From IMG/VR virus record IMGVR_UViG_3300008111_000002, positions 124,001 through 188,000 of that record: a stretch of DNA of 64,000 nt. One strand, given 5' to 3'. The notes under the pieces were generated by a model. The model was not told the origin of the DNA. It made no database searches and saw only the letters and a program-made list of their open reading frames with translations. The translations under genes were made by a program, and so were the position numbers. Of this stretch, positions 18,552-60,679 are shown one piece after another. How positions within the stretch are numbered: the stretch's first letter is position 1; every line of letters starts with the position of its first letter.

Positions 18552-18933
18552 AGTCTTGACTCATAATTAATACTGTATCTATTTTTGTTCTAATTAAAGG
18601 ATTAGTAATAGTTAATTTTAAACCCGTGTGTAAATTTTTTGGAATATCTTCTAAACTAGACCAGCACATTGTTTGAACCTCTGTAGTCAAAAATTCTTCT
18701 TCAACTAAACATATGTAAGTTCCGTATTCAAATCCTTTATCTTCACTGAGATACAGTTCGATTGGTAATAGTTTTCCTTGCGATTTTTTATATCGTTCTA
18801 TTAATTCTTGACCACTTTCAAAAATATTTTTACTTTTTTCAAAAGTAGGTACAGTCCATTTTAAATTTTCATGGATTAATAAAAATCTTTTAGTTGATGT
18901 ACAAAGAAATAAAATACCTGCACGTTTTTGCAT
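18532..18933 (-). CDS. degenerate NUDIX-fold-like protein
   Basis: Start reassigned to MQKRAGILFLC (ATG 18933). AGILF..FLLI..W.VP and ...W..LEDIPKNLH follow the Nudix layout, but the Nudix box is absent. Confidence 0.45.
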   Translation of the reverse strand: MQKRAGILFLCTSTKRFLLIHENLKWTVPTFEKSKNIFESGQELIERYKKSQGKLLPIELYLSEDKGFEYGTYICLVEEEFLTTEVQTMCWSSLEDIPKNLHTGLKLTITNPLIRTKIDTVLIMSQDYEFKNQ

Positions 18934-18937
18934 CAAG

Positions 18938-18943
18938 TACTTA
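18938..18943 (-). promoter_or_regulatory. late promoter variant (TAAGTA)
   Basis: 4 nt upstream of the ATG at 18933; overlaps the gp15 stop region. Confidence 0.45.
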
Positions 18944-20389
18944 TTAGAGATCCATTCTAAAACGCCAGTAACCTGAACGATATTCTCCCTCAAAACTTTT
19001 GAGCCATTGAGTTCCGTCCCAGCGATATTGAATACCAGTTTTTAAATTTTGAGTATAAACTGGTAACGTATTGTTTACATTGCTAGCATCAAACACTATT
19101 TGCCATCCTGTACCGGTGTATTCAATAATATCATTAGCACCTGCTTGGAATTGTTCCCATGCAAATACGCCTGTTTTTATTTGACCAGTTGTCGGATTGT
19201 TGTCTTGTTCACCGTCATATGTTTTATTTTCTGTAGTTATATCATCTAGTATTAGATATCTGTTTCCAGCCGCAACTGTATTGGCTTTAGGATTAAACTT
19301 AATTGGATCAATAATAGCATCAATTGTTGTTCGTCCGCTAATAATAGTATTTGAGGGTTTTTCATCAATTGTAATTAATAGATATGTCGAATCAACTTCG
19401 TTGACTACAAAAGATCCTCTAATTTCAAATCCGTTAGGTTGTAAGAAATATATTTGACTAATACCAGGACGATATCCTTCATATTGTTCAAGAATAGTAT
19501 TCCAATCTATTCGTTTGCCTAGTTTTGTTGGAGAACCGTTTTCTAATGTTTGAACAGCTTCTCCTGGACTTAGTACACTTAAATTATAATCGTTAGCTTG
19601 ACCGTTATTGCTTTTTAGTAATAACACACCAAAATTACCCGGAGTGTTTACATATTTTAATGGTGGAGTTCCGTTATAAACAAGATCATTGATATTTCCT
19701 ACATCGCCTTGGGTATTAAAAATATTCATAATGATATTCTTAACAACTCCAAGACGCTTGACCTTAGCCGGTGGAGTAATATAAATGGGCATTTCGCATT
19801 CTATCGTACATACATCAATTTCTGATTCCGTACCCTGAGGAATTGTTCTTGAACTAAATGTTAAATTTTTTAAATCAACAACACTTAAACTAGTCCAATC
19901 AATATAGTTATCTGTAGTTTGAATTTCTAAACTAGGGTTAAACAGAACCAATATCTGTTCTATTAATTGCAATTTTTGATCAGTATTACTGGTCCAAATA
20001 TCAGCCTTCATTGTAAGTTTGAAAGGAGTAGGCATTAGTCTTTCAACAGTATAGCCACCACCTTGCCCACCTTGATAGATAGGTTCACCAAAATTATCAA
20101 ATTGATTATAGGTGCGTTCTCTAATGTTTAGTTTACTAACAAAACTAGCATCTGATATTCTAGTGGTGTCTAATTCTAAACCACTGATATAGCAACTAAT
20201 TCTAGGAACTGTTGGTAATTTATTTTCACTATTTTCTTTAATAATAGCAGCTACTGATCTTGATAAATCACCGTACATCACAGGAACATGGCGAAGATCA
20301 CCGTCGCCGGCTTGATATTTAAAACCGATGAAGATTCGCATAAACTGTGTTACGTATCTTCTTATTTGTCCATCATAGAAAAAATCCAT
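18944..20389 (-). CDS. gp15: tail sheath stabiliser/tail completion protein (T4 gp15-like) with C-terminal extension
   Basis: FFYDGQIRRY...VPVMYG...LPTVPRIS...PTPFKLTM..DIW....QKLQLIEQILVLFNP matches the gp15 pattern; adjacent to neck genes. Confidence 0.78.
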   Translation of the reverse strand: MDFFYDGQIRRYVTQFMRIFIGFKYQAGDGDLRHVPVMYGDLSRSVAAIIKENSENKLPTVPRISCYISGLELDTTRISDASFVSKLNIRERTYNQFDNFGEPIYQGGQGGGYTVERLMPTPFKLTMKADIWTSNTDQKLQLIEQILVLFNPSLEIQTTDNYIDWTSLSVVDLKNLTFSSRTIPQGTESEIDVCTIECEMPIYITPPAKVKRLGVVKNIIMNIFNTQGDVGNINDLVYNGTPPLKYVNTPGNFGVLLLKSNNGQANDYNLSVLSPGEAVQTLENGSPTKLGKRIDWNTILEQYEGYRPGISQIYFLQPNGFEIRGSFVVNEVDSTYLLITIDEKPSNTIISGRTTIDAIIDPIKFNPKANTVAAGNRYLILDDITTENKTYDGEQDNNPTTGQIKTGVFAWEQFQAGANDIIEYTGTGWQIVFDASNVNNTLPVYTQNLKTGIQYRWDGTQWLKSFEGEYRSGYWRFRMDL

Positions 20390-21591
20390 TAGTTATCTGC
20401 CTTTGGTCGTAGTGCTTTACTTAAGCTTTGTTTTTCATCAACGGTTTTTCCATTGATATTATCAGTGTTTGTATTATTAATAAAACTGGCTTTTTGTGTA
20501 TTTCTAACATTATAACCTTCAAAACGATCTCCGGATTGTGTATCTGTAGGTCCAATATTGCTCATTGTTGTTCTAGCCACGTCTTCAACTCTCACCCAAT
20601 ATTTTCCATTATATCTAAATAATCTCTTAGGAGTGTAATCTGTTCTAAGATGATATTGACCCTCTTGTGCATTAACTGGAAATGCTAAACCGCTGGTAAA
20701 TGGGGAACCGTTGGGCGCGGAATCCTGACCTAATAGATAACCGTCATATCCTAATCTATCAGCAGTCTGTAATACCATACTGATATCAATTTGACTGTTT
20801 GAAGCCGCAACCTGAGCGGTATCAACAGTTACTAATTCTGGTTTACCTTCTTCGTTTACTTGAACAGTATAAAATGCACTGGTATTGTAACCACTCAGCG
20901 GCGCATCAGCTTCTGCTTGATCTAATACTGCCTGAGTAATTTGCATTTCTCGTTCGTAGGTACTCATAACATCTCGCAGTGTTTGATTTGTACCTTCGCC
21001 CGCAACGCCATCTAAAATATCTTTAAATTCTTGACTATCGACTAGAGGTTTGCACTTAGCACGATATAAATGCGGATACCATGTTGCACTAAACCCTTCT
21101 GCTGCACGAGTAACATCTTCTATAACGTAAAATCTTTTCAATGCAAAATTTAAATCGTTTAATGCAAAATCATCTTTTAAATGAGGAAGTTCTATAACAT
21201 CCCCACTGATTAATTTTCTACCAATTTTTTCAACAGTATCATTTATATGAAAAGTTATAAAAATTGTATCATTTTGTAAAAACAATCCAAATTGACTTAG
21301 ATTAAAATCTAAATCCTGTATGTTATAAACACCACGTAAAATATAAACATCTGGATCATATTTGCGATCTCTATTTTCTAAAAATAGCAGATCTTGTATT
21401 TGTGTTTCGGCTGGACTTCCCTGATATTCTGGGGTGGTAGGAGTATTTTCCAGCGCAGATGTTGATTTTGGTCCTACGTATTTGTGTATTAAAACGTCAG
21501 TACCGCCCACCTGGAACATTTCCCAAATATTTTTATCTATAAATTTGTAATCGTTGCCTTTTTCAGGACGATAAAGTGAAAGTCTTGGCAT
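20389..21591 (-). CDS. gp14: neck/head-closure protein (T4 gp14-like)
   Basis: Start reassigned to MPRLSLYRPEK (ATG 21591). Contains the LSQFGLFLQND..F..H...GDVIELP motif and sits between gp13 and gp15. Confidence 0.7.
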   Translation of the reverse strand: MPRLSLYRPEKGNDYKFIDKNIWEMFQVGGTDVLIHKYVGPKSTSALENTPTTPEYQGSPAETQIQDLLFLENRDRKYDPDVYILRGVYNIQDLDFNLSQFGLFLQNDTIFITFHINDTVEKIGRKLISGDVIELPHLKDDFALNDLNFALKRFYVIEDVTRAAEGFSATWYPHLYRAKCKPLVDSQEFKDILDGVAGEGTNQTLRDVMSTYEREMQITQAVLDQAEADAPLSGYNTSAFYTVQVNEEGKPELVTVDTAQVAASNSQIDISMVLQTADRLGYDGYLLGQDSAPNGSPFTSGLAFPVNAQEGQYHLRTDYTPKRLFRYNGKYWVRVEDVARTTMSNIGPTDTQSGDRFEGYNVRNTQKASFINNTNTDNINGKTVDEKQSLSKALRPKADN

Positions 21592-21598
21592 AGTACTA

Positions 21599-21620
21599 TA
21601 TTTACCGCTACCGATAAATA
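21599..21620. promoter_or_regulatory. back-to-back divergent late promoters (TAAATA on both strands)
   Basis: TATTTA 21599-21604 (minus) lies 7 nt from the gp14 ATG. TAAATA 21615-21620 (plus) lies 4 nt from the gp13 ATG. Both sit in a 33-nt gap. Confidence 0.7.
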
Positions 21621-21624
21621 CTGT

Positions 21625-22383
21625 ATGAGCCAAATTAATCCTGAAAGACAAGCTGTTTACGACTACTGCAAAGCCATGCTGGGCGATGGCATGATCGACG
21701 TAGAACTAGATCCTATACATTACGAAACAGCATTAAACAGAGCCCTAGCAACTTTTCGCCAACGTAGCGACAATGCTGTAGAAGAAAGTATGATATTTTT
21801 AACTACAGAAATTGATCAAAACGAATATATATTACCCAAAGAAATACAACAAGTTCGTCAAATATTTAGACGATCGGTTGGTTCTAGATCGGGTGGCGGC
21901 GGGGGTGGCACTGTATTTGAACCGTTCAATTTAGCCTATACAAATACATACTTGTTATCATCTACTAATATGGGCGGACTAGCTACCTATGAACTGTTTG
22001 CTGGGTATCAAGAAATGGTCGGAAGAATGTTTGGTGCATTTATGAACTTTCATTGGATTCCTCAAAGTAGAAAACTAGTATTACAACAACGACCTAGAAA
22101 TAACGAAGAGCTTATGCTTTGGTGTTATAATACTAGGCCCGATAGTTCAATAATCAACGATACCTATGCTAGTCAGTGGATTAAAGATTATAGTTTGGCT
22201 AACTGTAAAATGATACTAGGTCAAGCCAGAGAAAAATTTGCACAAATTGCCGGCCCAGCTGGCGGAACTAGTCTTAATGGCACTACATTAAAAACAGAAG
22301 CTCAGACTGAAATGGATAAACTAGTTGATGATTTGATGAAATTAGTTCCTGGCGGTCACGGCTATACATTTATTATTGGTTGA
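21625..22383 (+). CDS. gp13: neck protein (T4 gp13-like)
   Basis: YCKAMLG..MIDVEL..., WIKDYSLANCKMILGQAREKFAQI.GP.GG..LNG and C-terminal FIIG. Confidence 0.82.
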   Translation: MSQINPERQAVYDYCKAMLGDGMIDVELDPIHYETALNRALATFRQRSDNAVEESMIFLTTEIDQNEYILPKEIQQVRQIFRRSVGSRSGGGGGGTVFEPFNLAYTNTYLLSSTNMGGLATYELFAGYQEMVGRMFGAFMNFHWIPQSRKLVLQQRPRNNEELMLWCYNTRPDSSIINDTYASQWIKDYSLANCKMILGQAREKFAQIAGPAGGTSLNGTTLKTEAQTEMDKLVDDLMKLVPGGHGYTFIIG

Positions 22384-22408
22384 TTTTTTACTCTAGATAA
22401 ATTATAAT
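22380..22408 (+). promoter_or_regulatory. sigma70-type promoter
   Basis: TTGATT-17 nt-TATAAT upstream of the AGGAG RBS of the dNMP kinase. Confidence 0.65.
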
Positions 22409-22428
22409 ACTCTAGTCTAGGAGATATT

Positions 22429-23127
22429 ATGATTATAGGAATCTGCGGTTTTATTGGCAGCGGTAAAGATACTGTTGCAGACTATCTAGTAAACTTTCAT
22501 GGCTTTAGACGAGAAAGTTTTGCATCTACACTAAAAGACGCAGTATCCTCGGTATTCGGCTGGGACCGTACGTTATTGGAAGGGCGTACAAAAGCCGCTC
22601 GTGAATGGCGAGAACAGGTAGATCCTTGGTGGTCAGAACGCCTTAACATACCCACACTCACTCCTCGCTGGGTACTACAGTATTGGGGCACAGAAGTATG
22701 CCGTAAAGGCTTCCACGATGATATTTGGATTGCAAGTTTAGAAAATAAACTTAGAAACTCTAAAGATTCGGTGGTAATTTCAGATTGTCGTTTTCCTAAT
22801 GAAATTAAATCTATACGAGATGCCGGTGGTATTATTGTATGGGTAAAACGTGGCGCATTACCTGAATGGTACGAATGGGCATTGAATGCAAATCGGGGCG
22901 AGACAGGTAATATGTCTTGGGCAACCAGCAAGCATAATTTAGAAAAAGCGAGAATTCATGCTAGTGAAACTGCTTGGGTCGGTACTAAGTTTGATCACGA
23001 ATTGGATAATGATTCTACTATTGATGAATTATATAGTAAAATTAGAAATCTGGTACAAGATCCCCCTGACGCCAACGAACGCCCTCTTTATGTAGGACTC
23101 TCTGACAGTTTGCACATACAGTCTTAA
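22429..23127 (+). CDS. deoxynucleoside monophosphate kinase (T4 gp1-like)
   Basis: IIGICGFIGSGKDT P-loop, FA..LK, TPRWVLQYWGTE, VISDCRFPNE and HASE motifs. Confidence 0.9.
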   Translation: MIIGICGFIGSGKDTVADYLVNFHGFRRESFASTLKDAVSSVFGWDRTLLEGRTKAAREWREQVDPWWSERLNIPTLTPRWVLQYWGTEVCRKGFHDDIWIASLENKLRNSKDSVVISDCRFPNEIKSIRDAGGIIVWVKRGALPEWYEWALNANRGETGNMSWATSKHNLEKARIHASETAWVGTKFDHELDNDSTIDELYSKIRNLVQDPPDANERPLYVGLSDSLHIQS

Positions 23128-23374
23128 GATTATTTGGCCGACAATTGTTTAAATTTTCGTCTATATGATAAACATCAAACTGTTCTGGATGTTTACTGGT
23201 GTAACCACATTTATCACACTTGGATAATTTTTTATATCCCGCTCTATACCATTTTGGTATAACATCATCATTGCCGTAAAGACAGGTTTCACACTTACTT
23301 CTATAGTAAGTTTTACCATTTTTATGGTAATTAACTGCTGCGGGCCGTAAACCACACTTACATAAGGGTCTCAT
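23042..23374 (-). CDS. small zinc-binding HNH endonuclease-like protein
   Basis: CxC and CxxC pairs plus VYHIDENLNNCRPNNLKTVCANC. Confidence 0.7.
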   Translation of the reverse strand: MRPLCKCGLRPAAVNYHKNGKTYYRSKCETCLYGNDDVIPKWYRAGYKKLSKCDKCGYTSKHPEQFDVYHIDENLNNCRPNNLKTVCANCQRVLHKEGVRWRQGDLVPDF

Positions 23375-23379
23375 AAAAA

Positions 23380-23385
23380 TATTTA
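23380..23385 (-). promoter_or_regulatory. late promoter core (TAAATA)
   Basis: 5 nt upstream of the ATG at 23374. Confidence 0.55.
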
Positions 23386-23440: not shown

Positions 23441-23446
23441 TAAATA
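23441..23446 (+). promoter_or_regulatory. late promoter core (TAAATA) for tail sheath
   Basis: ATAAATA upstream of the GGGAG RBS and the ATG at 23480. Confidence 0.6.
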
Positions 23447-23479
23447 TATTAGAGTATTTAATACCGGGAGATTTATCAG

Positions 23480-26400
23480 ATGGCAACATTAAATTCACCA
23501 GGCGCATCAGTAACCGTCATTGACGAAAGTTTCTATACGCCAGCAGAGCCAGGTACAGTTCCACTAATAGTAGTGGCTACCGGACAGAATAAAACAAATG
23601 GCGCAGGCACAGGCACAGCCGTAGCGACCACAAAAGCAAATGCAGGTAAAGCATTTAAAATTACCAGTCAAAGAGACTTAGTTGATAACTATGGGGTTCC
23701 TTTCTTTGAAAAAACAGTAAGTGGAACACCAGTACATGGATCTGAAAGAAACGAATACGGTCTTTTATCAGCGTACAGCTTATTAGGTGTATCCAATGCT
23801 GCTTTTATTGTAAGAGCAGACATTGATTTAACTCAGCTTGCTGGAAGCACAACAGCCCCGGGAGCGAACCCTGACAATGGTGACTGGTGGTTAGATACTG
23901 CCAACACCGCATGGGGTATTTTTGAATGGAATGGAAACGCAGCCAGCACAACAGGCGGTCAGAAATTTGCATCAAAGACTCCAATTGTGTTAACATCAGA
24001 TGATAACGTTAATCTTGAAAATAGTGGTTCATATGGTCGTGCTCCAAAATCAAGTGTTGGAGTTCCGGGCGACTATGCTGTAGTTGCAGAAATGAATGAG
24101 ACCTACACTGTTGATAAAGAATCTGTAAAGATTTTTTATAAGAGAGATACCACTTTATTAGGTGGCGATGCTTGGGTACTAGTTGGTTCTACTGCATGGG
24201 CTGCTAGTCATGCTACAGTAAAAAGTACAGTAACAAGCCCATCAATTACAGCTGGACAAACATTTTTAATTAACGGTGTAACTGTAACAGCTACTGGCAC
24301 TGATGCAACATCTTTAGTAACAGCAATTAATGCACTTAACATCAACGGCGTAACCGCAGCAAAAAGCTTTGATAGAGTATATCTATACACAGATGCTACT
24401 AACGACGATAATGTTGGCGATTCTGCTAGATCAAATGCAATTATTATTGCCAGTGGCGGCGGAAATTCTGGAACAATCTTAACAGACGTTGGACTTACTG
24501 CTGGTACCTACTACGGTCCACAGTTACAAATGAGTCCACATACACAGGTTCCTGAATTTAGATCAGACGACACAAATCCACGACCAAGCGGTAGTGTATG
24601 GATCAAAACAACAGAACCAAATATTGGATCTCGTTGGAGATTAAAACAATGGAGCAGCGGTACAAGTCTATGGACTGCTAAAGAATCTCCATTATATGCA
24701 ACAACACATGCAGCTATTTTTAATTTAGATAGAACAGGCGGTGGCACAAATATTCCGGTCGATACAGCATTTATTCAATATAATTCAACAGAAGATTTTG
24801 GATACGATAACACTCCACAGACAGCAACTTTCCGTGTATGGAAAAGAAAAGTTGCTGGACAAACTAGAGTAGTATCTGCTCCTGTTGCAGCAAATACATT
24901 TATAGCTGGAACAAATACTTTTACTATTCGAGAAATGGTAAAAGGTCAGTTAGCTCTTGACACAGCAAAAACTGTAACATTTACAGCAACCGCGGGTGCT
25001 TCTGATTCTGACAGAATCGCTACTGCAATTAATGCTTTAGGATTAACACAGGTTGAAGCAAGTGTAACCAGTGCAAATGAAGTTGTAATTGTCCACAAAA
25101 CAGGTGGAGATATTAGATTCACCGACGGAACGAATGTTCCATTGGGTAAAATCTTTACAGCATTTAACCAATCGGCATTAACAGGTACAGCTAATTTATA
25201 TTCTTTAGTTGGTATTGGTACCGGTGGTACTTTCTTAGCAAGTAACTGGTTACCATTGTTTAACGCATCGAATGATTTTAAATCTAAGAGATCTGCGCCG
25301 TTAAACGAGCCAGCTGACGGACAACTATGGTTTAATCCTAGTTTCAGCGATGTAGACATTATGACACATAACGGTACATCATGGAAAGGTTACAAAACAG
25401 TATTTCCAAATACTGACCCAGCAGGTCCAATTGTTGCAGCTTCAAAACCAACAACACAAAGTGACGGCACTGCATTAGTAGACAATGATTTATGGATTAG
25501 TACAGCAGATGCTGAAAACTTCCCAACTATCTACAGATATAATAATAATACTAAGGAATGGGTATTAGTAGATAAAACTGATGATCAATCAGAAGAGGGT
25601 GTTGTGTTTGCTGATGCACGTTACGGTTCAAGCGGTGCTACAGGAAACGTAGCAGCAAGTATTGTGACATTGTTAACAAATGATTTTGTTGATCCAGATG
25701 CTCCAGATCCAGCAAACTATCCAAGAAGTATTTTGTTATACAACACAAGACGTAGCAGTGGCAACGTTAAAAAATACAGAAATAATTATATCGATACAAC
25801 TAAAGACAACACACGTTATCTAGGTCAATCTATGGCTGCTTACGCAACTGATCGTTGGGTAACTGCAAGTGGTAATCAAGAAGACGGTAGTGGAACTTTT
25901 GGACGCATTGCTCAGCGTCAAGTAGTTGTACAGGCACTTAAAGCTGCTGTCGATACAAGTCAAGAAATTCGCGACGAAGAGCGTCGTAACTTTAATTTAA
26001 TTGCTTGTCCGGGGTATCCTGAGCTATTAAGCAATCTAGTTAATTTAAATCTTGATCGCGGTGTAACATCATTTGTTCTTGGGGATAGTCCACTAAGACT
26101 AACAGCAGATTCAACTAGTTTAACCAACTGGGGAACTAATGCTAACGGTGCATTAGACAACGGTGATAAGGGACTAGTAAGCTACGATGAATACAGTGCA
26201 GTTTGGTATCCAAACGGATTCACTACAGATCTAAGCGGTGTGAACGCAGTGGTACCAGCAAGTCACATGATGTTACGTACAATTGCTTTAAGTGATCAAG
26301 TAAGTTATCCATGGTTTGCACCAGCTGGTACAAGACGTGGCGGTATTACAAATGCAACAGCAGTTGGTTATATTGATAGATCAACTGGAGAATTCCAACA

Positions 26401-27512: not shown

Positions 27513-27544
27513 AAAAAGCCCAGAGCAACTTCTGGGCTTTTTTA
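27513..27544 (+). terminator. rho-independent terminator
   Basis: AAAAAGCCCAGA-GCAACT-TCTGGGCTTTTTT. Confidence 0.9.
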
Positions 27545-27549
27545 TTCAA

Positions 27550-27555
27550 TAAATA
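27550..27555 (+). promoter_or_regulatory. late promoter core (TAAATA)
   Basis: Immediately after the terminator and 5 nt before the ATG at 27561; no RBS. Confidence 0.65.
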
Positions 27556-27560
27556 AATGT

Positions 27561-28688
27561 ATGGCAAATAAATTCACACGTTTCTTAAATGGTATTGTTA
27601 ACGGAGCAACAAATCCAAAAGGCAACATGGCCAACTGGAGGCATGCTACTCGAATCTTTGTTGATAATAACTATGCATTGGCGCCAAGAACAAAATTCAT
27701 GTTCTTTGTGCAATTTAATATTAGTAATGAAGCAGTTGGCGCGACCTCATTTAATGAAAGACACAGCGGAGAAGTAGGTCTATTAGTAAAAACTGCAGAT
27801 TTACCAAAATATGCTTTTGATCAAGTTATTAAAAATCAATATAATAGAAAAAAGATTTTATATAAACAAATTAACTATGAACCTATAACTATTACTCTTC
27901 ACGATGATAATACTGGTGTTGTTAATGCTATGTGGGCATTATATTACGGAACCCATATTGCTGATAGATTAGCACCGACTGCTGCATATACCACTGATCA
28001 TTATCGTCCTGCTGCTCAAGACATGGAGAATTATAATTATGGAATGGATAATCGATATTTTTCTCCCTTTTTTAATAGTATTTCAATTTATACAATGAGT
28101 CGTCGAAGATACAACGGATATACATTAATTAATCCAAGAATTACAAATTGGTCGCACGGCAATCTTTCCTATGCAGAAAGTGGAACTGCAGAAAGTCAAA
28201 TGACTCTTTCATATGAAGCTGTTCAATATAGTTCTGGTCAAGTATTTCAAGATGTTCCAGATGGTTTTGCCAAAGGTGCATACTATGACTTGGTACCTAG
28301 TCCGTTAAGTGTTGCTGGCGGTGGCGTCAGTAATTTGTTTGGCGATGGCGGAGTTTTATCAGGAATGGAATCAGTATTTGGAGATGTATCAAAAGGCAAT
28401 ATTTTTACTAAAAAAGGCGGATTTTTAAATACCGCTATTGCCGCAATTAATACTGCAAAAAATCTAAGTAATTTGACTAAAGAAGGTTTAGCAGCAGAAT
28501 TTGCAAATATTTTATCATCACCCGGAGGATTTGATGCTGCCGTTAATACCGTAGGAGGTATTGTTGGAACAGTATTTCCTAAAAATGCCGGAACCAGTCC
28601 ATCAAATAACGACGGAGTAGCATCGCCAAGAACCATTGCAACTGCTGCATTTACCGGAGCTCCTGTGACATCACCATCAGGAGAATAA
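27561..28688 (+). CDS. tail-tube-like baseplate protein (gp48/gp54-type tube initiator)
   Basis: Tube-fold pattern LVKTADLP...NQYNRK...YEPITITLHDD...LINP.I...H..LSY...MTLSYE. Confidence 0.6.
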   Translation: MANKFTRFLNGIVNGATNPKGNMANWRHATRIFVDNNYALAPRTKFMFFVQFNISNEAVGATSFNERHSGEVGLLVKTADLPKYAFDQVIKNQYNRKKILYKQINYEPITITLHDDNTGVVNAMWALYYGTHIADRLAPTAAYTTDHYRPAAQDMENYNYGMDNRYFSPFFNSISIYTMSRRRYNGYTLINPRITNWSHGNLSYAESGTAESQMTLSYEAVQYSSGQVFQDVPDGFAKGAYYDLVPSPLSVAGGGVSNLFGDGGVLSGMESVFGDVSKGNIFTKKGGFLNTAIAAINTAKNLSNLTKEGLAAEFANILSSPGGFDAAVNTVGGIVGTVFPKNAGTSPSNNDGVASPRTIATAAFTGAPVTSPSGE

Positions 28689-29059: not shown

Positions 29060-29503
29060 ATGTCGTCAAGATTTGCTCAAGGTAAATTTGAAATGAAAAA
29101 TCCCGACAAATACATCGGGAAGAAAACTCCGCTAGCTCGTAGTAGTTGGGAATTTGTTTTTATGAAAATGTTAGATGAACATCCCGGAGTTGAACATTGG
29201 GCTAGTGAAAGTATACAAATACCTTATAGAGATCCATTAACTGGAAAATATACAATATATGTTCCGGATTTTTTTGTTCAGTATACTGATAAAAGTGGAA
29301 AAAAACATGCAGAAGTGGTAGAAGTAAAACCCCAGAGTCAAACACTAAGAGAACACACTGGTAAGAGTCAATATAATCAAGCGCAATATGTTAAAAACTT
29401 AGCCAAGTGGGAAGCTGCCGTTGCTTGGTGTAAACAAAAAGGTATCAAGTTTAGAGTAGTAAACGAAGGCGATATTTTCCATCAGGGTAAAAAACGTAGA
29501 TAA
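29060..29503 (+). CDS. gp4: head completion protein (T4 gp4-like, TnsA-type nuclease fold)
   Basis: QGKF..KNPDKY.G..., RSSWE..FM, WASE.I.IPY, YVPDF, EVKP, N.AKWEAA..WC...GIKFRVV.E. Confidence 0.88.
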   Translation: MSSRFAQGKFEMKNPDKYIGKKTPLARSSWEFVFMKMLDEHPGVEHWASESIQIPYRDPLTGKYTIYVPDFFVQYTDKSGKKHAEVVEVKPQSQTLREHTGKSQYNQAQYVKNLAKWEAAVAWCKQKGIKFRVVNEGDIFHQGKKRR

Positions 29504-29506
29504 GTA
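29501..29506 (+). promoter_or_regulatory. late promoter variant (TAAGTA)
   Basis: 5 nt before the ATG at 29512; overlaps the upstream TAA. Confidence 0.45.
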
Positions 29507-29511
29507 TTGAT

Positions 29512-29988
29512 ATGACTAAAAAACTTGAAGACCTTTTTAACTTACCTGAAAAAAAAGATGAAAAATATGTTTCATCAGTACCTGCCGAACACGAGCAGGT
29601 AAAAGATTTAGATCGTAGCTATAAAGAAGTTGAAGAAATAACCAAATCATTACCTGAAATTAAAGAATTAGAAAATCTTGATGAAAAAGAATTAGACGAT
29701 CTAGCTCAAAAAGCTGAACAAGCATATGATGATTTAATGGATTTGGGCATGAATGTAGAAGTGCGATATGCTAGTAGAATTTTTGAAGTTGCTAGTAGTA
29801 TGTTAGGACACGCAATTACTGCTAAATCTAATAAAGTTGAAAAGAAATTAAAAGCTATTGATTTACAGCTTAAAAAGTACAAAATAGACAAAGATACGCC
29901 AAGTTCAGAAAACGATGTATTAAATGGACAAGGATTTATTATTACAGATAGAAATGAGCTGATGAAAAAACTCAGCCAAAAGGAATAA
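29512..29988 (+). CDS. putative terminase small subunit (gp16-like)
   Basis: Helical protein with RIFEVASSML and C-terminal F..DRNELMKKL, resembling T4-like small terminases; lies upstream of the large terminase. Confidence 0.55.
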   Translation: MTKKLEDLFNLPEKKDEKYVSSVPAEHEQVKDLDRSYKEVEEITKSLPEIKELENLDEKELDDLAQKAEQAYDDLMDLGMNVEVRYASRIFEVASSMLGHAITAKSNKVEKKLKAIDLQLKKYKIDKDTPSSENDVLNGQGFIITDRNELMKKLSQKE

Positions 29989-29991
29989 ATA
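29986..29991 (+). promoter_or_regulatory. late promoter core (TAAATA)
   Basis: 5 nt before the ATG at 29997. Confidence 0.55.
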
Positions 29992-29996
29992 TACGT

Positions 29997-30572
29997 ATGA
30001 AAACTTTTAAAGAATATCTAGCTGAAAGCAAAAAAATGTGGTCCTTTAGGATCAAAGTTGCGGGTGAGCTGCCCGAGGGCTTTCAGTCAACAGTTAAAGA
30101 TCGTCTCCAAAAATTTGGATGCACACGATTTGATAAAACAGCTCAAACTCCAATACAGAAAAATGCTATTGATTTTCCGCAATTGGAAAACATAGAAGTT
30201 TCGATGTTTGAAGTTGAAACAGCATATCCTGTTACACCTCCAGAAATTGCAAGCATTATTAAATCATGTGATTTGATCAAAGAAGAATATGTGTTGGTGA
30301 GATACACTACTGAAGAATTGGAACAAACAGTTGCTGGCGATGAATCTGGTAAATCTTTGTTAACAGACCCGTCATATAGCGAAGTTGCTAAGATTAAACA
30401 TAAAGATTATTTTGGTGATGATTTTAATAAATCATTCTTAAAAGATTTAGAGAAAACAGCTAAAGCACGTAAAAAAGAATTGGGACATGACAAAGGTAAA
30501 CCTGATGTTCTAGGATCAGCTCCCAAAGCTAAAGAAGATAAAGCCGGTGCTAAAAGCGCCGTGGGGAGTTAA
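29997..30572 (+). CDS. hypothetical protein, probable internal head protein
   Basis: N-terminus MKTFKEYLAE resembles the T4 capsid-targeting sequence MKTYQEFIAE. Confidence 0.6.
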   Translation: MKTFKEYLAESKKMWSFRIKVAGELPEGFQSTVKDRLQKFGCTRFDKTAQTPIQKNAIDFPQLENIEVSMFEVETAYPVTPPEIASIIKSCDLIKEEYVLVRYTTEELEQTVAGDESGKSLLTDPSYSEVAKIKHKDYFGDDFNKSFLKDLEKTAKARKKELGHDKGKPDVLGSAPKAKEDKAGAKSAVGS

Positions 30573-32879: not shown

Positions 32880-32885
32880 TAAATA
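32880..32885 (+). promoter_or_regulatory. late promoter core (TAAATA)
   Basis: 4 nt before the ATG at 32890; no RBS. Confidence 0.6.
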
Positions 32886-32889
32886 TAAT

Positions 32890-39405: not shown

Positions 39406-39433
39406 TATTTACCATTAACTGCTCTGATAAATA
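39406..39433. promoter_or_regulatory. divergent late promoters
   Basis: TATTTA 39406-39411 (minus) and TAAATA 39428-39433 (plus, 5 nt before the ATG at 39439). Confidence 0.65.
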
Positions 39434-39438
39434 TCAGC

Positions 39439-40131
39439 ATGAAAAACATTGTTTTAATTACTGGTGGTTTTGATCCAATACACTCCGGACACATATCATA
39501 TATCAACGCGGCAAGAGAGCTCGGCGATTCGTTAATTGTTGGAGTTAATTCTGACGAATGGCTACGTCGAAAGAAAGGGCAGAAGTTTATGCCTTGGGAA
39601 GAACGTGCAAGCATTGTAGCTAACTTATACAGTGTTAGTCGAGTGATAAATTTTGACGATAGCGATAATAGTGCTAAAGATGCTATCCGAAAAGTTAGAG
39701 CAATACATCCTAATGCTAATATTATCTTCGCCAACGGCGGAGATCGAACCAAAGAAAATATTCCAGAAATGGATCTACTTAAAGAAATGTTACACCTAGA
39801 ATTTGTATTTGGTGTCGGTGGAGTAGATAAAAAAAATTCTAGCAGTTGGATTTTACAAGAATGGAAAGCTCCCAAAACTGAACGCCCTTGGGGTTATTAT
39901 CGTGTACTACACGAAAATGGCAAGGAAGTTAAAGTTAAAGAATTAACTGTGGAACCAGGACAATGCCTTAGTATGCAACGTCATCAAAACAGAGCAGAAC
40001 ATTGGTTTATTGCAGAAGGTACTGCAGAAATCTACACAATTAATAGAAGCACAGATCAAGAATTAGTTGGAATTTTTCATAAACATCAAAGTTTACATAT
40101 TAAAAAAGACGAATGGCATCAAGGACTGTAA
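39439..40131 (+). CDS. cytidylyltransferase-like (TagD/RfaE family) domain fused to a truncated phosphomannose-isomerase-type cupin
   Basis: TGGFDPIHSGH, VGVNSDEWL.RKKG, FANGGDR and NSSS, then ERPWG.Y, LSMQRH..RAEHW. The cupin stops at WHQ, and its expected DIERK end lies in another frame. Confidence 0.85.
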   Translation: MKNIVLITGGFDPIHSGHISYINAARELGDSLIVGVNSDEWLRRKKGQKFMPWEERASIVANLYSVSRVINFDDSDNSAKDAIRKVRAIHPNANIIFANGGDRTKENIPEMDLLKEMLHLEFVFGVGGVDKKNSSSWILQEWKAPKTERPWGYYRVLHENGKEVKVKELTVEPGQCLSMQRHQNRAEHWFIAEGTAEIYTINRSTDQELVGIFHKHQSLHIKKDEWHQGL

Positions 40132-48149: not shown

Positions 48150-48167
48150 TAAATACTCTGTTATTTA
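48150..48167. promoter_or_regulatory. face-to-face late promoter cores
   Basis: TAAATA 48150-48155 (plus) and TATTTA 48162-48167 (minus) in the 40-nt gap between divergent genes. Confidence 0.5.
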
Positions 48168-48177
48168 TTTTTAAAAA

Positions 48178-55309: not shown

Positions 55310-55315
55310 TAAATA
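55310..55315 (+). promoter_or_regulatory. late promoter core (TAAATA)
   Basis: Upstream of the AAGGA RBS of the gene at 55337. Confidence 0.55.
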
Positions 55316-55336
55316 TTATTAATCAAAGGACCAATA

Positions 55337-56092
55337 ATGCAATTTAATCCAAGTTATTTATACGCAAACAAAGTGGACGTTTTCAGCGATCTTGGCTCCT
55401 GGCAAACTGAGAGGTATCGCAAAGTGTATCAACGCACCCTAAAAATTTATCGCGGAGTCGATAATCCTATAGATTTTCAAGTTCGCAACTCTGATCAAAA
55501 ACCCCAATCCATTGCTGGACAAACTGTGGTATTTAATCTTTTTGCTTATGAGTCGCAAGAACTTATTATGTCCAGAGATTGTACAGTTGTAGATGCTGTT
55601 AAAGGTAAAGTATCTGTAACTATCAGTGAAGGAGAAGCATTAACGCTAACTCCTGGATTTTATACATTTTCTTTATATACTCTATCCAATGGTATTAAAA
55701 AACCATTGTACGGAGACAGCCAATTTGGCGCACTGGGTAGATTAGAATTAATTGGTAACGTGTATGGTAATGTTATACCTACAGATATCATAACAACTTT
55801 TAATACAGAAAGTACGTATAAAGTCAGCAGCATCATTGATGCCAAACCGCATTTGAATAATAATTCTGCACTGCATACTTTTGCGTTCTATGGAACTGCA
55901 TATAGTGGTAGTGTAGTAATTCAAGCAAGCATGGACGAAAATACCACTACTGGAAATTGGATTGATCTAGCAACAATTCCATTAACCAATTCTTCAATAT
56001 CATATAAAAATATAGAAGGCGTTTGGAGTTGGTTTAGAATCAAGCATACTCAAACTGCTGGAACACTTGACAAAGTATTGTATAGATATTAA
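55337..56092 (+). CDS. putative virion structural protein (BppU-like/Ig-like beta domains)
   Basis: KIYRGVDNPIDFQV.N.DQKP...GKVSVTI...L..G.Y.FS pattern; late promoter. Confidence 0.55.
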   Translation: MQFNPSYLYANKVDVFSDLGSWQTERYRKVYQRTLKIYRGVDNPIDFQVRNSDQKPQSIAGQTVVFNLFAYESQELIMSRDCTVVDAVKGKVSVTISEGEALTLTPGFYTFSLYTLSNGIKKPLYGDSQFGALGRLELIGNVYGNVIPTDIITTFNTESTYKVSSIIDAKPHLNNNSALHTFAFYGTAYSGSVVIQASMDENTTTGNWIDLATIPLTNSSISYKNIEGVWSWFRIKHTQTAGTLDKVLYRY

Positions 56093-58670: not shown

Positions 58671-58677
58671 AATAACT

Positions 58678-60102
58678 ATGATTGACAATTACAGTCCCGA
58701 AACACAAAAAATATTCTTAGAAATGATGATGGCTGATGCTGAATCTTATTTCAGATGTCAAAGCATCTTTGATCACAGTCTATTTGATCGACGTTATCAA
58801 GAATCTGCCGAATTTATTAAAGTATACGTTGATCAATATCGAGCAATGCCAGAATATAACATGGTCAATGCTGCCTGTAACACAGATTTTAAAAAGCCAG
58901 ACAGCGTTAAAGAAGGCCATGTAGATTGGCTATTGGATAGTTTTGAAAAATTTGTAAGACACAAAAGTATTGAACGTGCAATCATTAATTCTGCAGATCT
59001 ATTAGACAAAGGCGATTATGGATCTGTTGAAACTATGATTAAAGAAGCAGTACAGATTGGTCTTGCTAAAGATATGGGCACTGACTACTTTGCAGATCCT
59101 AAATCACGATTAATGGGATTAAAAGATAAAAACGGACAAATATCTACTGGCTGGAAAAATCTTGATAATAGATTGTTTGGCGGTATGAATCGTGGCGAGC
59201 TTAATATTTTTGCTGGTGGTAGTGGTGCAGGTAAATCATTATTTCTTGCAAACCTTGGTCTTAATTGGGCAATGGCTGGATTAAATGTTGTCTATGTAAC
59301 ATTAGAACTTAGTGAAGCATTAGTTAGTATGCGTATTGACAGTATGCTAACAGGAATTCCAACAAAAGAAATTTTTAAAGATATTGAAAACGTTGAAACC
59401 AAAGTTAAACTGATTGGAAAGAAGGCAGGTGCATATCAGATCAAATATGTACCAAGTGGTAAAAATGTTAACGATCTAAGAGCGTATATTAAAGAATTTG
59501 AAATTAAAACAGAACGTAAGGTTGATGTTATCTTAGTTGACTACTTAGACTTACTAATGCCAATCAGCAGAAAGATTAGTCCTGCAGATTTGTTCATCAA
59601 AGACAAATATGTTTCTGAAGAACTGCGTAACTTTGCAGTTGAACGTAAAGCTATTCTAGTCACAGCCGCACAGTTGAATCGAGGTGCTGTAGAAGAAGTA
59701 GAATATGATCACAGTCATATCTCAGGAGGACTTAGTAAGATTCAAACTGCAGATAATGTGTTTGGTATTTTTACATCACGTGCTATGAGAGAGCGAGGAC
59801 GTTATCAATTACAATTAATGAAAACTAGATCATCAAGCGGTGTAGGAATGAAAGTAGATCTAGAATTTAATTTAGAAAGTCTAAGGATCAGCGATCTACC
59901 CGAAGATGAACAAGAATCCAGTGGAGGTATGCGTCCTACTTCTGGAATATTAGATGACATAAAACGCAAAGCCACAGTAAAGGCCCATCAAGAGGACTCT
60001 GAACCAAATCCATTCCAAGGTGCTGCTGTACCTAAAGTAAGAGCCAATGTTGAGAGCACGAAACTGCGGGATCTGCTGAACAATATTGGTAATGAAGAAT
60101 AG
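58678..60102 (+). CDS. gp41: replicative DNA helicase (T4 gp41/DnaB-like)
   Basis: ISTGW..LD..L.GG, Walker A GGSGAGKS, YVTLEL, VDYLDL, TAAQLNR and MKTR. Confidence 0.93.
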   Translation: MIDNYSPETQKIFLEMMMADAESYFRCQSIFDHSLFDRRYQESAEFIKVYVDQYRAMPEYNMVNAACNTDFKKPDSVKEGHVDWLLDSFEKFVRHKSIERAIINSADLLDKGDYGSVETMIKEAVQIGLAKDMGTDYFADPKSRLMGLKDKNGQISTGWKNLDNRLFGGMNRGELNIFAGGSGAGKSLFLANLGLNWAMAGLNVVYVTLELSEALVSMRIDSMLTGIPTKEIFKDIENVETKVKLIGKKAGAYQIKYVPSGKNVNDLRAYIKEFEIKTERKVDVILVDYLDLLMPISRKISPADLFIKDKYVSEELRNFAVERKAILVTAAQLNRGAVEEVEYDHSHISGGLSKIQTADNVFGIFTSRAMRERGRYQLQLMKTRSSSGVGMKVDLEFNLESLRISDLPEDEQESSGGMRPTSGILDDIKRKATVKAHQEDSEPNPFQGAAVPKVRANVESTKLRDLLNNIGNEE

Positions 60103-60331
60103 AAGAGTAAAACTTTGTGATTGGACCCAAAGTCGTAGTATCGATACTGTTGATTTAAATTGGGTTAGAATAAGACAACTAATAGGATCGCCTAAAGTAG
60201 ATTGGTTGTTAGATCAACCGCAAACTAAATGTCAATTAGTAGTTGATAAACTCAACGAAAATATATCCTTAGTAGCTGAATTTTACGATGATGCTACATT
60301 AGTGCTTTACCATTTAACTTGGGCTAAATAA
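60092..60331 (+). CDS. hypothetical protein
   Basis: 79 aa from the ATG at 60092. Confidence 0.5.
   Translation: MKNRRVKLCDWTQSRSIDTVDLNWVRIRQLIGSPKVDWLLDQPQTKCQLVVDKLNENISLVAEFYDDATLVLYHLTWAK
60325..60330 (+). promoter_or_regulatory. late promoter core (TAAATA)
   Basis: 4 nt before the ATG at 60335. Confidence 0.55.
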
Positions 60332-60334
60332 TGG

Positions 60335-60679
60335 ATGCGAGCAAAAGAGTTTATTTTTGAAAGAGAATTTTCTAAAAGAAAAAGTGCTACTCTAAGTACT
60401 ACTTACGAGTATCCTTCTATGCCCAGTGCCGATGCCTATAGAATTTATAGATTTGGTATGGCTATGGCAAATCATACTATGGCCAATAAAGAAGGACCTA
60501 CTGGTAATCATGCTGTTATTGTTGCTTATACCGATGGTGACGATGAGATTATCAAAGGTGCTGAAAAAACTACCGGACATAAAGGAAATCTAGCTGCGGA
60601 TCGTGGAAGTCACGAACCAACAGATACCAACAACGTAAGTCCGGTATCTAAACTAAAACGTAACAAATACGGAGTTTAA
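60335..60679 (+). CDS. hypothetical protein, probable internal head protein
   Basis: N-terminal MRAKEFIFE resembles a capsid-targeting peptide; late promoter. Confidence 0.6.
   Translation: MRAKEFIFEREFSKRKSATLSTTYEYPSMPSADAYRIYRFGMAMANHTMANKEGPTGNHAVIVAYTDGDDEIIKGAEKTTGHKGNLAADRGSHEPTDTNNVSPVSKLKRNKYGV

What the first reader, a model, noticed from the sequence alone, without database searches (positions are those of the whole stretch)
18933..60335. Late promoter motif sits 4-5 nt from start codons across the window: systematic leaderless late mRNAs
Seen: TAAATA/TAAGTA ends 4-5 nt before the ATG at 18933(-), 21625, 23374(-), 27561, 29512, 29997, 32890, 39439 and 60335, and 7 nt before 21591(-). 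Most of these genes lack a Shine-Dalgarno, whereas genes with the motif further upstream (599, 3966, 11459, 23480, 55337, 61453) have one. Known: the T4 gp55 late promoter TATAAATA starts transcription about 5-6 nt downstream. Inference: the phage makes leaderless late transcripts for a subset of morphogenesis genes and leadered ones for others. This could tune stoichiometry and would hint at a host permissive for leaderless translation. Caveat: the DNA is AT-rich and some motifs overlap TAA stops.
Basis: partly seen in the sequence, partly recalled or inferred. Interest (0 to 1): 0.68.

Follow-up and report, generated by a model that had tools for sequence, protein, structure and literature searches.

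The report
Late promoters fused to start codons
In this uncultured freshwater jumbo phage and its many metagenomic relatives, a T4-type late promoter box (TAAATA) sits exactly 4-5 bases before the ATG of about a third of the late transcription units, so these genes are most likely expressed from messenger RNAs that begin at the start codon and need no ribosome-binding site; no RNA data exist to prove it.

Summary
All ten sites read as described. Before 222 gene starts of the 210-kb contig, TAAATA ends 4-5 nt from the ATG 11 times against 0.7 expected. The spacing is bimodal: 4-7 nt, almost none at 8-16, then 17-38. Close-motif genes lack a Shine-Dalgarno; far-motif genes have one (p about 1e-5). 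TAAATA is depleted about threefold inside genes in both orientations, as a DNA signal would be. The contig encodes a gp55-family sigma.

In 80 related IMG/VR loci (50-88% protein identity), motif and 5-nt spacing are kept before the same genes while the spacer letters vary. The base before the ATG is a pyrimidine in 122 of 122 unique N5 sites (41% elsewhere). T4 structural numbering puts the box at -13 to -6, so N5 places +1 on the A of ATG.

T4, PA5oct, Atu_ph07, Phosso, SCTP-2 and PBECO4 show no excess, so the trait is specific to this clade. Some genes switch between the two modes in different lineages.

No RNA run holds the phage, so the start site is inferred. The two TAAGTA sites are less certain. 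The stoichiometry and host ideas are untested. I rate this a new variant of known kinds: gp55-type late promoters, and leaderless phage mRNAs as in Thermus phage YS40.

The parts
21615..21627 (+). TAAATA (21615-21620), 4-nt spacer, then the ATG of a 252-aa head-tail adaptor (Ad2-like) gene. Predicted leaderless late promoter.
   Evidence: Read. phrog_211. Orthologues have N5 spacing in 54 of 55 unique upstream sequences, with varying spacer letters.
21589..21604 (-). TAAATA (21604-21599 on the minus strand), 7-nt spacer ending ACT, then the ATG at 21591 of a 400-aa virion structural protein. It lies back to back with the promoter above in a 33-nt intergenic region. Predicted 2-3-nt leader.
   Evidence: spacing is 7 in 39 and 8 in 10 unique orthologous sequences. 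The N-terminus is conserved to Atu_ph07 and PA5oct, with Met1 invariant.
23372..23385 (-). TAAATA, 5 nt, then the ATG at 23374 of a 110-aa HNH-like protein.
   Evidence: N5 in 43 of 46 unique orthologous sequences.
27513..27563 (+). Intrinsic terminator hairpin (27513-27542) with a T-run, then 7 nt on TAAATA (27550-27555), a 5-nt spacer and the ATG at 27561 of a 375-aa tail-tube paralogue.
   Evidence: Hairpin -17.5 kcal/mol, z = -5.5. Terminator, box and N5 are kept in 25 of 26 unique orthologous sequences. phrog_4542.
29986..29999 (+). TAAATA (its TAA is the stop of the upstream gene), 5 nt, then the ATG at 29997 of a 191-aa protein.
   Evidence: N5 in 19 of 20.
32880..32892 (+). TAAATA, 4 nt, then the ATG at 32890 of an 830-aa virion structural protein.
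   Evidence: No orthologues were within reach of the fetched loci.
39428..39441 (+). TAAATA, 5 nt, then the ATG at 39439 of a 230-aa cytidylyltransferase plus cupin protein. A divergent leadered TAAATA lies at 39411-39406 (minus strand).
60325..60337 (+). TAAATA, 4 nt, then the ATG at 60335 of a 114-aa protein of unknown function.
   Evidence: No comparative data.
18931..18943 (-). TAAGTA variant (its TAA is a tandem stop after the sheath-like gene 18944-20389), 4 nt, then the ATG at 18933 of a 133-aa protein. Possible weak internal promoter or coupling site.
   Evidence: ATAAGTA at N4 or N5 in 42 of 46 unique orthologous sequences. The base at -1 is mixed, so this is less secure.
29501..29514 (+). 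TAAGTA variant (its TAA is the stop of 29060-29503), 5 nt, then the ATG at 29512 of a 158-aa protein that may be a small terminase.
   Evidence: N4 or N5 in 17 of 19.
572..601 (+). Leadered late promoter: TAAATA 21 nt before the ATG at 599 (tail fibre protein, 1114 aa), with a Shine-Dalgarno.
3941..3968 (+). Leadered late promoter: TAAATA 19 nt before the ATG at 3966 (2472-aa virion protein), with a Shine-Dalgarno.
11435..11461 (+). Leadered late promoter behind a terminator: TAAATA 18 nt before the ATG at 11459, with a Shine-Dalgarno. In some relatives the same gene has TAAATA 4 nt before the ATG.
23441..23482 (+). Leadered late promoter: TAAATA 33 nt before the ATG at 23480 (tail sheath, 1118 aa), with a strong Shine-Dalgarno.
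   Evidence: (31-35 nt in relatives, CCAGGAGA kept).
55310..55339 (+). Leadered promoter: TAAATA 21 nt before the ATG at 55337, with a Shine-Dalgarno.

Best explanation
TAAATA is the -10-like core of this phage's late promoters. It is most likely read by host RNA polymerase carrying the phage's own gp55-family sigma factor. That sigma gene lies outside the window, at contig positions 100,573-101,427.

By the T4 geometry the last A of the box is at -6, so transcription starts at the sixth base downstream. The phage uses two promoter-to-gene layouts:

1. Box 17-38 nt before the ATG. This gives a leader of 12 nt or more that carries a Shine-Dalgarno. The sheath, tail fibres, giant virion proteins, baseplate genes and the capsid operon are of this type.
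2. Box 5 nt (sometimes 4) before the ATG. The A of the ATG is then itself +1, and the mRNA begins with AUG and has no ribosome-binding site. Such leaderless mRNA is bound directly by 70S ribosomes with initiator tRNA. A 7-8 nt variant would give a 2-3-nt leader.

Shown here: the motif, its spacing classes, the lack of a Shine-Dalgarno, selection on the hexamer, the sigma gene, and conservation across a clade. Inferred: the start site, the sigma-promoter pairing, and translation of the 5'-AUG transcripts.
For: Enrichment and bimodal spacing: 11 observed against 0.69 expected at N4+N5, with an empty zone at 8-16 nt.

Shine-Dalgarno is absent at close sites and present at far sites.

The hexamer is depleted inside genes in both orientations: sense 43 against 122+-9, antisense 46 against 151+-10, from synonymous-codon shuffles. 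Genome-wide the count is 150 against 300-417. This fits a signal read on DNA, not on mRNA.

A gp55-family sigma is present: phrog_12791 E = 2.5e-84 and T4 gp55 family phrog_234 E = 2.9e-26. The equivalents of T4 gp55 N13, Y97 and T99 are kept (residue roles from PMC7892883).

The T4 cryo-EM numbering has adenines at -12, -9 and -8. This places TATAAATA at -13 to -6, so N5 puts +1 on the A of ATG.

In 80 related loci TAAATA-N5-ATG occurs 156 times, against 0-1 at N3 and N6. Per orthologue the N5 counts are 54/55, 43/46, 25/26 and 19/20, with free variation of the spacer letters.

The base at -1 is a pyrimidine in 122 of 122 unique N5 sites against 283 of 691 other starts. This is the Y(-1)R(+1) start-site preference. 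At leadered sites the sixth base after the box is A in 36 of 55.

Intrinsic terminators lie directly upstream of the box at 27561 and, outside the window, at contig position 117559. Relatives have them before the TerL gene.

All start codons at these sites are ATG, with one GTG among 57 for one gene.

The box precedes structural genes. The same ATAAATA box was already predicted as the late promoter in relatives CBB and GAP32 (PMC5259590).
Against: - No transcript 5' ends are available: all 24 listed runs are DNA contigs from lake, freshwater and 'fungus' metagenomes.
- No gp33 or gp45 homologue was found with T4-family profiles, but the contig is only about 60% complete.
- Positions -13 and -12 of the T4 box are poorly kept: A at -12 in 57%.
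- In the window's own phage, several N4 sites have G or A at -1, and the -1 pyrimidine bias is not significant on this genome alone (8/13 against 92/204, p = 0.27).
- The comparative counts are not phylogenetically independent, although 18 distinct protein families carry such sites.
- The 5' ends of the predicted leaderless mRNAs are only marginally less structured than other genes.
Confidence: 0.68

Rival explanations
1. The close TAAATA boxes are real late promoters, but the first gene is not translated from the 5'-AUG transcript. Its protein would come from longer read-through transcripts by a Shine-Dalgarno-independent or coupled mechanism. Alternatively the true start site lies a few bases inside the gene, so the box serves the downstream genes only.
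For: Several close sites sit inside gene strings where read-through from upstream is possible: 29997, 29512 and 18933 overlap the preceding stop. Leaderless translation is inefficient in E. coli (general knowledge). There are no RNA data.
Against: Exact N5 spacing and a 100% pyrimidine at -1 are conserved in 122 unique sequences, which only makes sense if the A of ATG is the initiating base. At 27561 a strong terminator lies directly upstream, and at 21591/21625 there is no upstream gene in either direction. These genes would then have no recognisable initiation signal at all.
Confidence: 0.15
2. The hexamer next to the ATG acts on the mRNA as a translation signal, not as a promoter. It could be an A/U-rich non-Shine-Dalgarno ribosome-binding or re-initiation element.
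For: It lies where a ribosome-binding site would be. Three sites overlap TAA stops. A/U-rich enhancers bound by protein S1 are known (general knowledge).
Against: The same hexamer occurs 17-38 nt upstream of genes that have their own Shine-Dalgarno, at variable distance. It is depleted equally on the antisense strand of genes, which an mRNA signal would not be. A fixed 5-nt spacing with an invariant 6-mer is unlike S1 enhancers. The box matches the late promoter of the T4 family, and a gp55-family sigma is encoded.
Confidence: 0.07
3. The box is a -10-only promoter read by a host sigma factor, or by another phage factor, rather than by the gp55-like protein. The leaderless layout would still hold.
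For: gp33 and gp45 were not found. The T at -13 and A at -12 of the T4 box are weakly kept. The sigma-promoter pairing was not tested.
Against: TAAATA matches TATAAT at only 3 of 6 positions and lacks the T at -7. The phage has separate sigma-70-type promoters with TTGACA/TATAAT before non-structural genes, for example the dNMP kinase gene at 22429. The box is tied to structural genes, and a gp55-family sigma with conserved base-pocket residues is present.
Confidence: 0.08
4. Chance co-occurrence in AT-rich DNA.
For: The genome has 37% G+C. The motif is short.
Against: 11 observed against 0.69 expected, and no shuffle exceeded 4. The hexamer is under-represented overall. Box and spacing are conserved in orthologous positions across 50-88% identical proteins. 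The reversed-pattern control gives 0-1 hits against 6-16 in clade contigs.
Confidence: 0.01

Closest known systems
T4-type late promoters (TATAAATA, gp55/gp33/gp45 system), and the ATAAATA late box predicted in RaK2-like jumbo phages CBB and GAP32
   Same: An A/T-rich -10-like box with no -35 element and an A/T-rich stretch just downstream. It lies before structural genes, and a gp55-family sigma is encoded by the phage. The hexamer is identical to the core of the T4 box and to the CBB/GAP32 motif (PMC2988020, PMC7892883, PMC5259590).
   Different: Only the 6-nt core is invariant here. No gp33 or gp45 homologue was detected in the partial contig. The sigma is about 100 aa longer than T4 gp55. 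In about 36% of the boxed gene starts the box is fused to the start codon. T4, PA5oct, Atu_ph07, Phosso, SCTP-2 and PBECO4 show no such excess.
Leaderless transcripts of Thermus phages YS40 and Lalka27a, and the '-10 region adjacent to ORF' expression mode of Deinococcus-Thermus
   Same: A promoter -10 element a few bases before the ORF with a strict spacing. [quoted passage not shown] The layout is used systematically by a phage (bioRxiv 10.64898/2026.04.20.719267; PMC12340547).
   Different: Those cases use host-sigma-type or other promoter elements (TANNNT, TAGGGT) in a host phylum where leaderless mRNAs are the norm, and their start sites were mapped. Here the promoter is of the gp55 late type in a T4-superfamily jumbo phage. 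Only a subset of late units is affected, and neighbouring genes use strong Shine-Dalgarno sites. Nothing has been mapped.
Classical single leaderless phage mRNAs (lambda cI from PRM), and in-silico leaderless gene signatures in bacteria (PMC3160421)
   Same: A 5'-terminal AUG, ATG as start codon, and a -10-like signal about 10 nt before the start used as the genomic signature.
   Different: Those are isolated regulatory genes or host genes. They are not a conserved class of late structural and packaging genes across a phage clade.

Membership tests
T4-type (gp55-dependent) late promoter | A -10-like A/T box TATAAATA at -13 to -6 with no conserved -35 element | tested here: met
   The core TAAATA (-11 to -6) is invariant by the way sites were chosen, and it is under purifying selection elsewhere. 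Position -12 is A in 57% and -13 is variable. Nothing is conserved further upstream. The match is therefore to the 6-7-nt core, as in CBB and GAP32.
T4-type (gp55-dependent) late promoter | The phage encodes a gp55-family sigma factor | tested here: met
   Contig 100,594-101,361: phrog_12791 E = 2.5e-84 and phrog_234 E = 2.9e-26. BLASTP to T4 gp55 gives 40% identity over 77 aa, with the N13, Y97 and T99 equivalents kept and H95 replaced by F.
T4-type (gp55-dependent) late promoter | gp33 co-activator and gp45 sliding clamp | tested here: inconclusive
   There were no hits to phrog_254 or phrog_223 in the contig. The contig is about 60% complete, and the CBB authors also found neither.
T4-type (gp55-dependent) late promoter | Located before late (virion, packaging) genes, with an A/T-rich segment downstream of the box | tested here: met
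   The box precedes sheath, tail fibre, baseplate, adaptor, tube paralogue and virion protein genes. Positions -4 and -3 are A or T in about 85-93% of sites.
T4-type (gp55-dependent) late promoter | Transcription starts about 6 nt after the box and depends on gp55 | not testable with these tools
   No RNA run holds the phage. Indirect support comes from A at the sixth base in 36 of 55 leadered sites, and from Y(-1)/A(+1) in 122 of 122 N5 sites.
Leaderless mRNA | The transcript 5' end is at, or within a few nt of, the start codon | not testable with these tools
   No RNA data. This is inferred from promoter geometry only.
Leaderless mRNA | A -10 element a few bp upstream of the ORF at a fixed spacing | tested here: met
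   N4-N5 in the window. N5 holds in 19/20 to 54/55 of unique orthologous sequences per gene.
Leaderless mRNA | No Shine-Dalgarno before the start codon | tested here: met
   Mean anti-SD duplex energy is -0.45 for close sites against -5.47 for far sites, which is at the random-position level. p = 1e-5.
Leaderless mRNA | AUG as the start codon | tested here: met
   ATG is found at every orthologous start of the seven close-site genes, apart from one GTG in 57 for the 23374 gene. This is a weak test because ATG dominates in this phage anyway.

The most novel reading that the evidence does not exclude
A large uncultured clade of freshwater jumbo phages has fused the T4-type late promoter to the start codon of about a third of its late transcription units. 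Affected genes include a tube paralogue, an adaptor and, in some lineages, the large terminase. This would be the first systematic use of leaderless mRNAs in the T4 superfamily. It would imply that the unknown host, or ribosomes and initiation factors reprogrammed late in infection, translate 5'-AUG mRNAs efficiently. That would give the phage a late translation channel independent of the Shine-Dalgarno interaction.
Probability: 0.3. Interest if true: 0.75.

Novelty: new variant of a known kind. Interest (0 to 1): 0.58.

Why it matters
If the start sites are where the geometry predicts, this clade shows that the minimal gp55-type promoter can double as the whole expression signal of a gene. 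One hexamer and five bases would replace both the leader and the ribosome-binding site.

It also provides a natural paired comparison. Leadered and leaderless late genes lie side by side, and the same gene uses either mode in different lineages. That is useful for studying how efficient leaderless translation can be in bacteria outside Actinobacteria and Deinococcus-Thermus.

It matters for annotation as well. Gene callers that rely on Shine-Dalgarno scores will misplace or miss these starts, and the spacing rule gives a simple way to fix them.

It may carry a host signal for an abundant freshwater phage group with no cultured member. At least 555 related loci in IMG/VR match one structural protein.

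Tried and rejected
- RNA evidence. The single run search found only DNA contigs from lake, freshwater and 'fungus' metagenomes. Read laying was therefore not used, since contigs cannot show 5' ends.
- Close DNA relatives among cultured phages: none. The best cultured protein matches are 35-40% identical.
- A single-protein search of IMG/VR returned only identical copies of the same phage. The profile search was needed to reach relatives.
- The -1 pyrimidine test on the window's own genome alone was not significant (p = 0.27). It became decisive only with the relatives.
- Folding of the first 40 nt gave only a marginal difference: own genome p = 0.26, relatives p = 0.003 but not independent.
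- Host clues led nowhere. No S21 or IF3 gene was found. Only tRNA-Leu(TAA) and tRNA-Met lie at the contig end. The PseB-like sugar dehydratase matches many Paenibacillus genomes at 50-55%, which is uninformative.
- gp33 and gp45 were not found.
- The spacing-0 and spacing-1 peaks in the relatives are artefacts: a Shine-Dalgarno spacer in one gene, and an extra in-frame ATG inside the 7-nt spacer of the 21591 orthologues.
- Sigma-70-like promoters are not enriched in 18-36 kb (55 against 63 expected), and none explains the close sites.
- The paper on phage YS40 (PMC1885378) could not be opened. It is cited only through papers that refer to it.

Full report
**What the window is.**
The window is bases 124,001-188,000 of a 209,836-bp linear IMG/VR viral contig with 37% G+C, estimated about 60% complete. 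It has no near-identical cultured relative. Its structural proteins are 35-40% identical to those of jumbo phages Atu_ph07, Phosso, PA5oct and SCTP-2, and about 28% identical to the PBECO4/121Q group. The DNA occurs in lake, freshwater and 'fungus' metagenome runs from 15 studies.

The window carries these genes:
- tail fibre and giant virion proteins;
- two sheath-family proteins and two tube-family proteins;
- an adaptor and the large terminase;
- a RecA-like protein;
- a lower-GC sugar-nucleotide gene cluster.

**Check of the observation.**
Every claimed site reads as described. The one slip is 61453, where the nearby box is TAAATC.

On the whole contig, TAAATA-N(k)-ATG with an ORF of at least 60 codons gives 7 and 7 hits at k = 4 and 5. 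It gives none at k = 0-3 or 8-10, and a broad second mode from about 15 to 35.

Before 222 first-ATG gene starts there are 11 hits at k = 4+5, against 0.69 expected from dinucleotide shuffles of the same upstream regions. The maximum in 500 shuffles was 4.

Genes with the close box have anti-SD duplex energies like random sequence: mean -0.45 kcal/mol, 1 of 15 at or below -4.5. Of the genes with the far box, 78% have a Shine-Dalgarno, with a mean of -5.47. Mann-Whitney p is about 1e-5.

**The hexamer is a selected DNA signal.**
TAAATA is not common because the DNA is AT-rich. It is 2-3 times rarer than Markov models of order 0-4 predict: 150 copies against 300-417.

Inside coding regions it is depleted in both orientations relative to synonymous-codon shuffles. 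The sense count is 43 against 122+-9, and the antisense count is 46 against 151+-10. About 40% of all copies lie in the few percent of sequence that is intergenic or at gene edges.

Depletion on the antisense strand argues for a signal read on DNA (a promoter) and against one read on mRNA.

**Link to T4-type late transcription.**
The contig encodes a gp55-family sigma about 23 kb upstream of the window. It matches phrog_12791 at E = 2.5e-84 and the T4 gp55 family phrog_234 at E = 2.9e-26.

In a pairwise alignment with T4 gp55, the equivalents of N13, Y97 and T99 are kept and H95 is F. These residues line the pockets that hold the flipped adenines of the T4 box (PMC7892883).

The same paper places adenines at -12, -9 and -8. 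That fixes TATAAATA at -13 to -6, so a box followed by five bases puts +1 on the A of the ATG.

The related jumbo phages CBB and GAP32 were already reported to have ATAAATA before structural genes and a gp55-like sigma, without detectable gp33 or gp45 (PMC5259590). I also found no gp33 or gp45 homologue in this partial contig.

The boxed genes here are overwhelmingly virion genes. A dNMP kinase gene embedded in the late module has a conserved TATAAT-type promoter and a strong Shine-Dalgarno instead.

**Comparative evidence.**
A profile of the 400-aa virion protein with its Atu_ph07 and PA5oct orthologues retrieved 80 IMG/VR loci, from at least 555 matches. These loci are 60-79% identical in that protein.

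Pooled over these loci, TAAATA-N5-ATG at first-ATG ORFs occurs 156 times. N3 gives 0 and N6 gives 1. Control hexamers show nothing comparable.

Per orthologous gene, counting only unique upstream sequences:

| Gene (window start) | Product | Spacing kept |
|---|---|---|
| 21625 | adaptor | N5 in 54/55 |
| 23374(-) | HNH-like protein | N5 in 43/46 |
| 27561 | tube paralogue | N5 in 25/26 |
| 29997 | 191-aa protein | N5 in 19/20 |
| 21591(-) | virion protein | N7 in 39, N8 in 10; spacer almost always ends ACT |
| 18933(-) | 133-aa protein | ATAAGTA at N4/N5 in 42/46 |
| 29512 | 158-aa protein | ATAAGTA at N4/N5 in 17/19 |
| 23480 | sheath | box at 31-35 nt, CCAGGAGA Shine-Dalgarno kept |

The spacer letters vary freely while box and spacing are kept.

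The 21591/21625 pair shares a 33-nt intergenic region. It holds nothing but two back-to-back boxes and two spacers. In some relatives the boxes abut as TATTTATAAATA.

At 27561 an intrinsic terminator (-17.5 kcal/mol, z = -5.5) ends 7 nt before the box in the window and in the relatives. A new transcript must therefore start between the terminator and the ATG.

**An independent pointer to the start site.**
In the 122 unique N5 sites of the relatives, the base just before the ATG is T (101) or C (21) and never a purine. Pyrimidines make up 41% at 691 other gene starts. Pyrimidine at -1 and purine at +1 is the usual start-site preference of bacterial RNA polymerase (general knowledge). The other spacer positions are not fixed.

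At leadered boxes the sixth base after the box is A in 36 of 55 sites, while the flanking positions are not. Both classes share the A/T-rich -4 and -3 positions and a preference for A at -12.

In the window's own phage several sites have N4, with G or A at -1. The -1 bias is not significant on this genome alone. For these sites the start may be the A of the ATG (fifth base after the box) or the preceding G.

**Distribution of the trait.**
Whole-record counts of TAAATA-N5-ATG, and of the stricter TAAATA-N4-Y-ATG, were compared with the reversed-pattern control (N5 for the first five rows, N4-Y for the last five).

| Record | Size | Pattern | Control |
|---|---|---|---|
| Clade contig G001 | 147 kb | 16 | 0 |
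| Clade contig G002 | 101 kb | 10 | 3 |
| Clade contig G003 | 59 kb | 6 | 1 |
| Clade contig G004 | 90 kb | 11 | 1 |
| T4 | 169 kb | 10 | 5 |
| Atu_ph07 | 490 kb | 15 | 9 |
| PA5oct | 287 kb | 15 | 12 |
| PBECO4 | 348 kb | 3 | 8 |
| SCTP-2 | 440 kb | 12 | 10 |
| Phosso | 469 kb | 3 | 1 |

Cultured phages show no excess. In Atu_ph07 and PA5oct the orthologue of the 21591 gene has the box 28 and 19 nt upstream, with a Shine-Dalgarno. The fused layout is therefore a derived feature of this uncultured clade.

Within the clade the mode is labile. The large terminase gene is operon-internal with a Shine-Dalgarno in the window, but it follows a terminator with TAAATA-N5-ATG in L023, L024, L055 and L080. 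The 11459 gene is leadered in the window and N4 in L075, L084, L086 and L091.

Eighteen distinct protein families carry N4/N5 sites in the sequences examined.

**What remains inferred, and what is not supported.**
No RNA run holds the phage. The start sites, their timing and the translation of 5'-AUG transcripts are therefore all inferences.

The stoichiometry idea finds no simple pattern. The major capsid protein (strong Shine-Dalgarno, operon-internal), the sheath and the main tube are leadered. A tube paralogue, the adaptor, an 830-aa virion protein and several small proteins are of the leaderless type.

The host is unknown. The phage uses strong GGAG-type Shine-Dalgarno sites for many genes, so the host reads Shine-Dalgarno sites. 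No S21 or IF3 gene was found, and an AMG-based host hint was uninformative.

The TAAGTA sites are conserved. Each overlaps the stop or tandem stop of the upstream gene, and G would replace the adenine at -8 that T4 gp55 holds in a pocket. They may be weak internal promoters or coupling sites.

**Comparison with the known, and verdict.**
The promoter type is known: T4, and predicted in CBB and GAP32. Leaderless mRNAs from a -10 box set against the ORF are known and mapped in Thermus phages YS40 and Lalka27a, in Deinococcus-Thermus and in lambda cI.

Literature searches for 'leaderless' together with gp55, late promoters, T4-like or jumbo phages found no report of this combination. The PA5oct transcriptome paper reports only sigma-70-type promoters.

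I therefore rate it a new variant of known kinds. It is well supported at the sequence level, and it is of moderate to good interest because it is clade-wide, precisely spaced and directly testable.

Noticed in passing
window 21589-21627: Two late-type boxes lie back to back in a 33-nt divergent intergenic region, which has no room for anything else. In some relatives the two hexamers abut as TATTTATAAATA in a region of about 24 nt. Two polymerase complexes could hardly open both at once.
   Followed up: partly
window 22380-23127: A dNMP kinase gene (phrog_139) sits inside the late structural module. It has its own sigma-70-type promoter (TTGATT-17-TATAAT) and a strong GGAGG Shine-Dalgarno. 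Both are conserved in all 55 unique orthologous upstream sequences, and there is no TAAATA.
   Followed up: partly
window 23042-23374 (-): An HNH-like 110-aa gene is kept at the same position in 59 of 80 related loci, with a conserved N5 late box. This is unlike a mobile homing endonuclease and may point to a packaging-associated HNH protein.
   Followed up: no
window 31284-32873 and 11459-12526; L023, L024, L055, L080, L075, L084, L086, L091: The large terminase gene and the 355-aa gene at 11459 switch between the leadered (Shine-Dalgarno) layout and the box-fused layout in different lineages of the clade.
   Followed up: yes
window 38500-48200: A lower-GC (32%) cluster of sugar-nucleotide and glycosyl-transfer genes, partly on the minus strand. 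It includes a PseB/CapD-like dehydratase (44055-45035), an RmlD-like reductase (43234-44058), a GT8 glycosyltransferase (40153-40839) and a cytidylyltransferase plus cupin protein (39439-40131). The cluster may modify the phage or the host surface.
   Followed up: partly
window 3966-11384 and 12538-18294: Two giant paralogous virion proteins of 2472 and 1918 aa, both matching phrog_5838/phrog_1645. Each lies behind a leadered TAAATA unit.
   Followed up: no
contig G000:C1:100573-101427 (outside the window; L006:1480-2334): The gp55-like sigma is 284 aa long against 185 aa in T4. It has about 100 extra residues between the N-terminal helix and the sigma-region-2-like domain. Its own gene has a Shine-Dalgarno and no TAAATA box. 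It is divergent from a leadered late gene.
   Followed up: partly
window 35401-35495: A terminator hairpin (35401-35420) is followed by the best sigma-70-like promoter of the region (TTGACA-17-CATAAT, 11 of 12). A TAAATA lies by chance inside its spacer. This probably marks the switch from the late module to an early or middle unit that includes the RecA-like gene at 36775.
   Followed up: no
whole contig: TAAGTA is also somewhat under-represented: 87 copies against 110-243 expected.
   Followed up: no
contig G000:C1:207345-207511: The contig carries only two tRNA genes, Leu(TAA) and Met(CAT), at 207,345-207,511.
   Followed up: no
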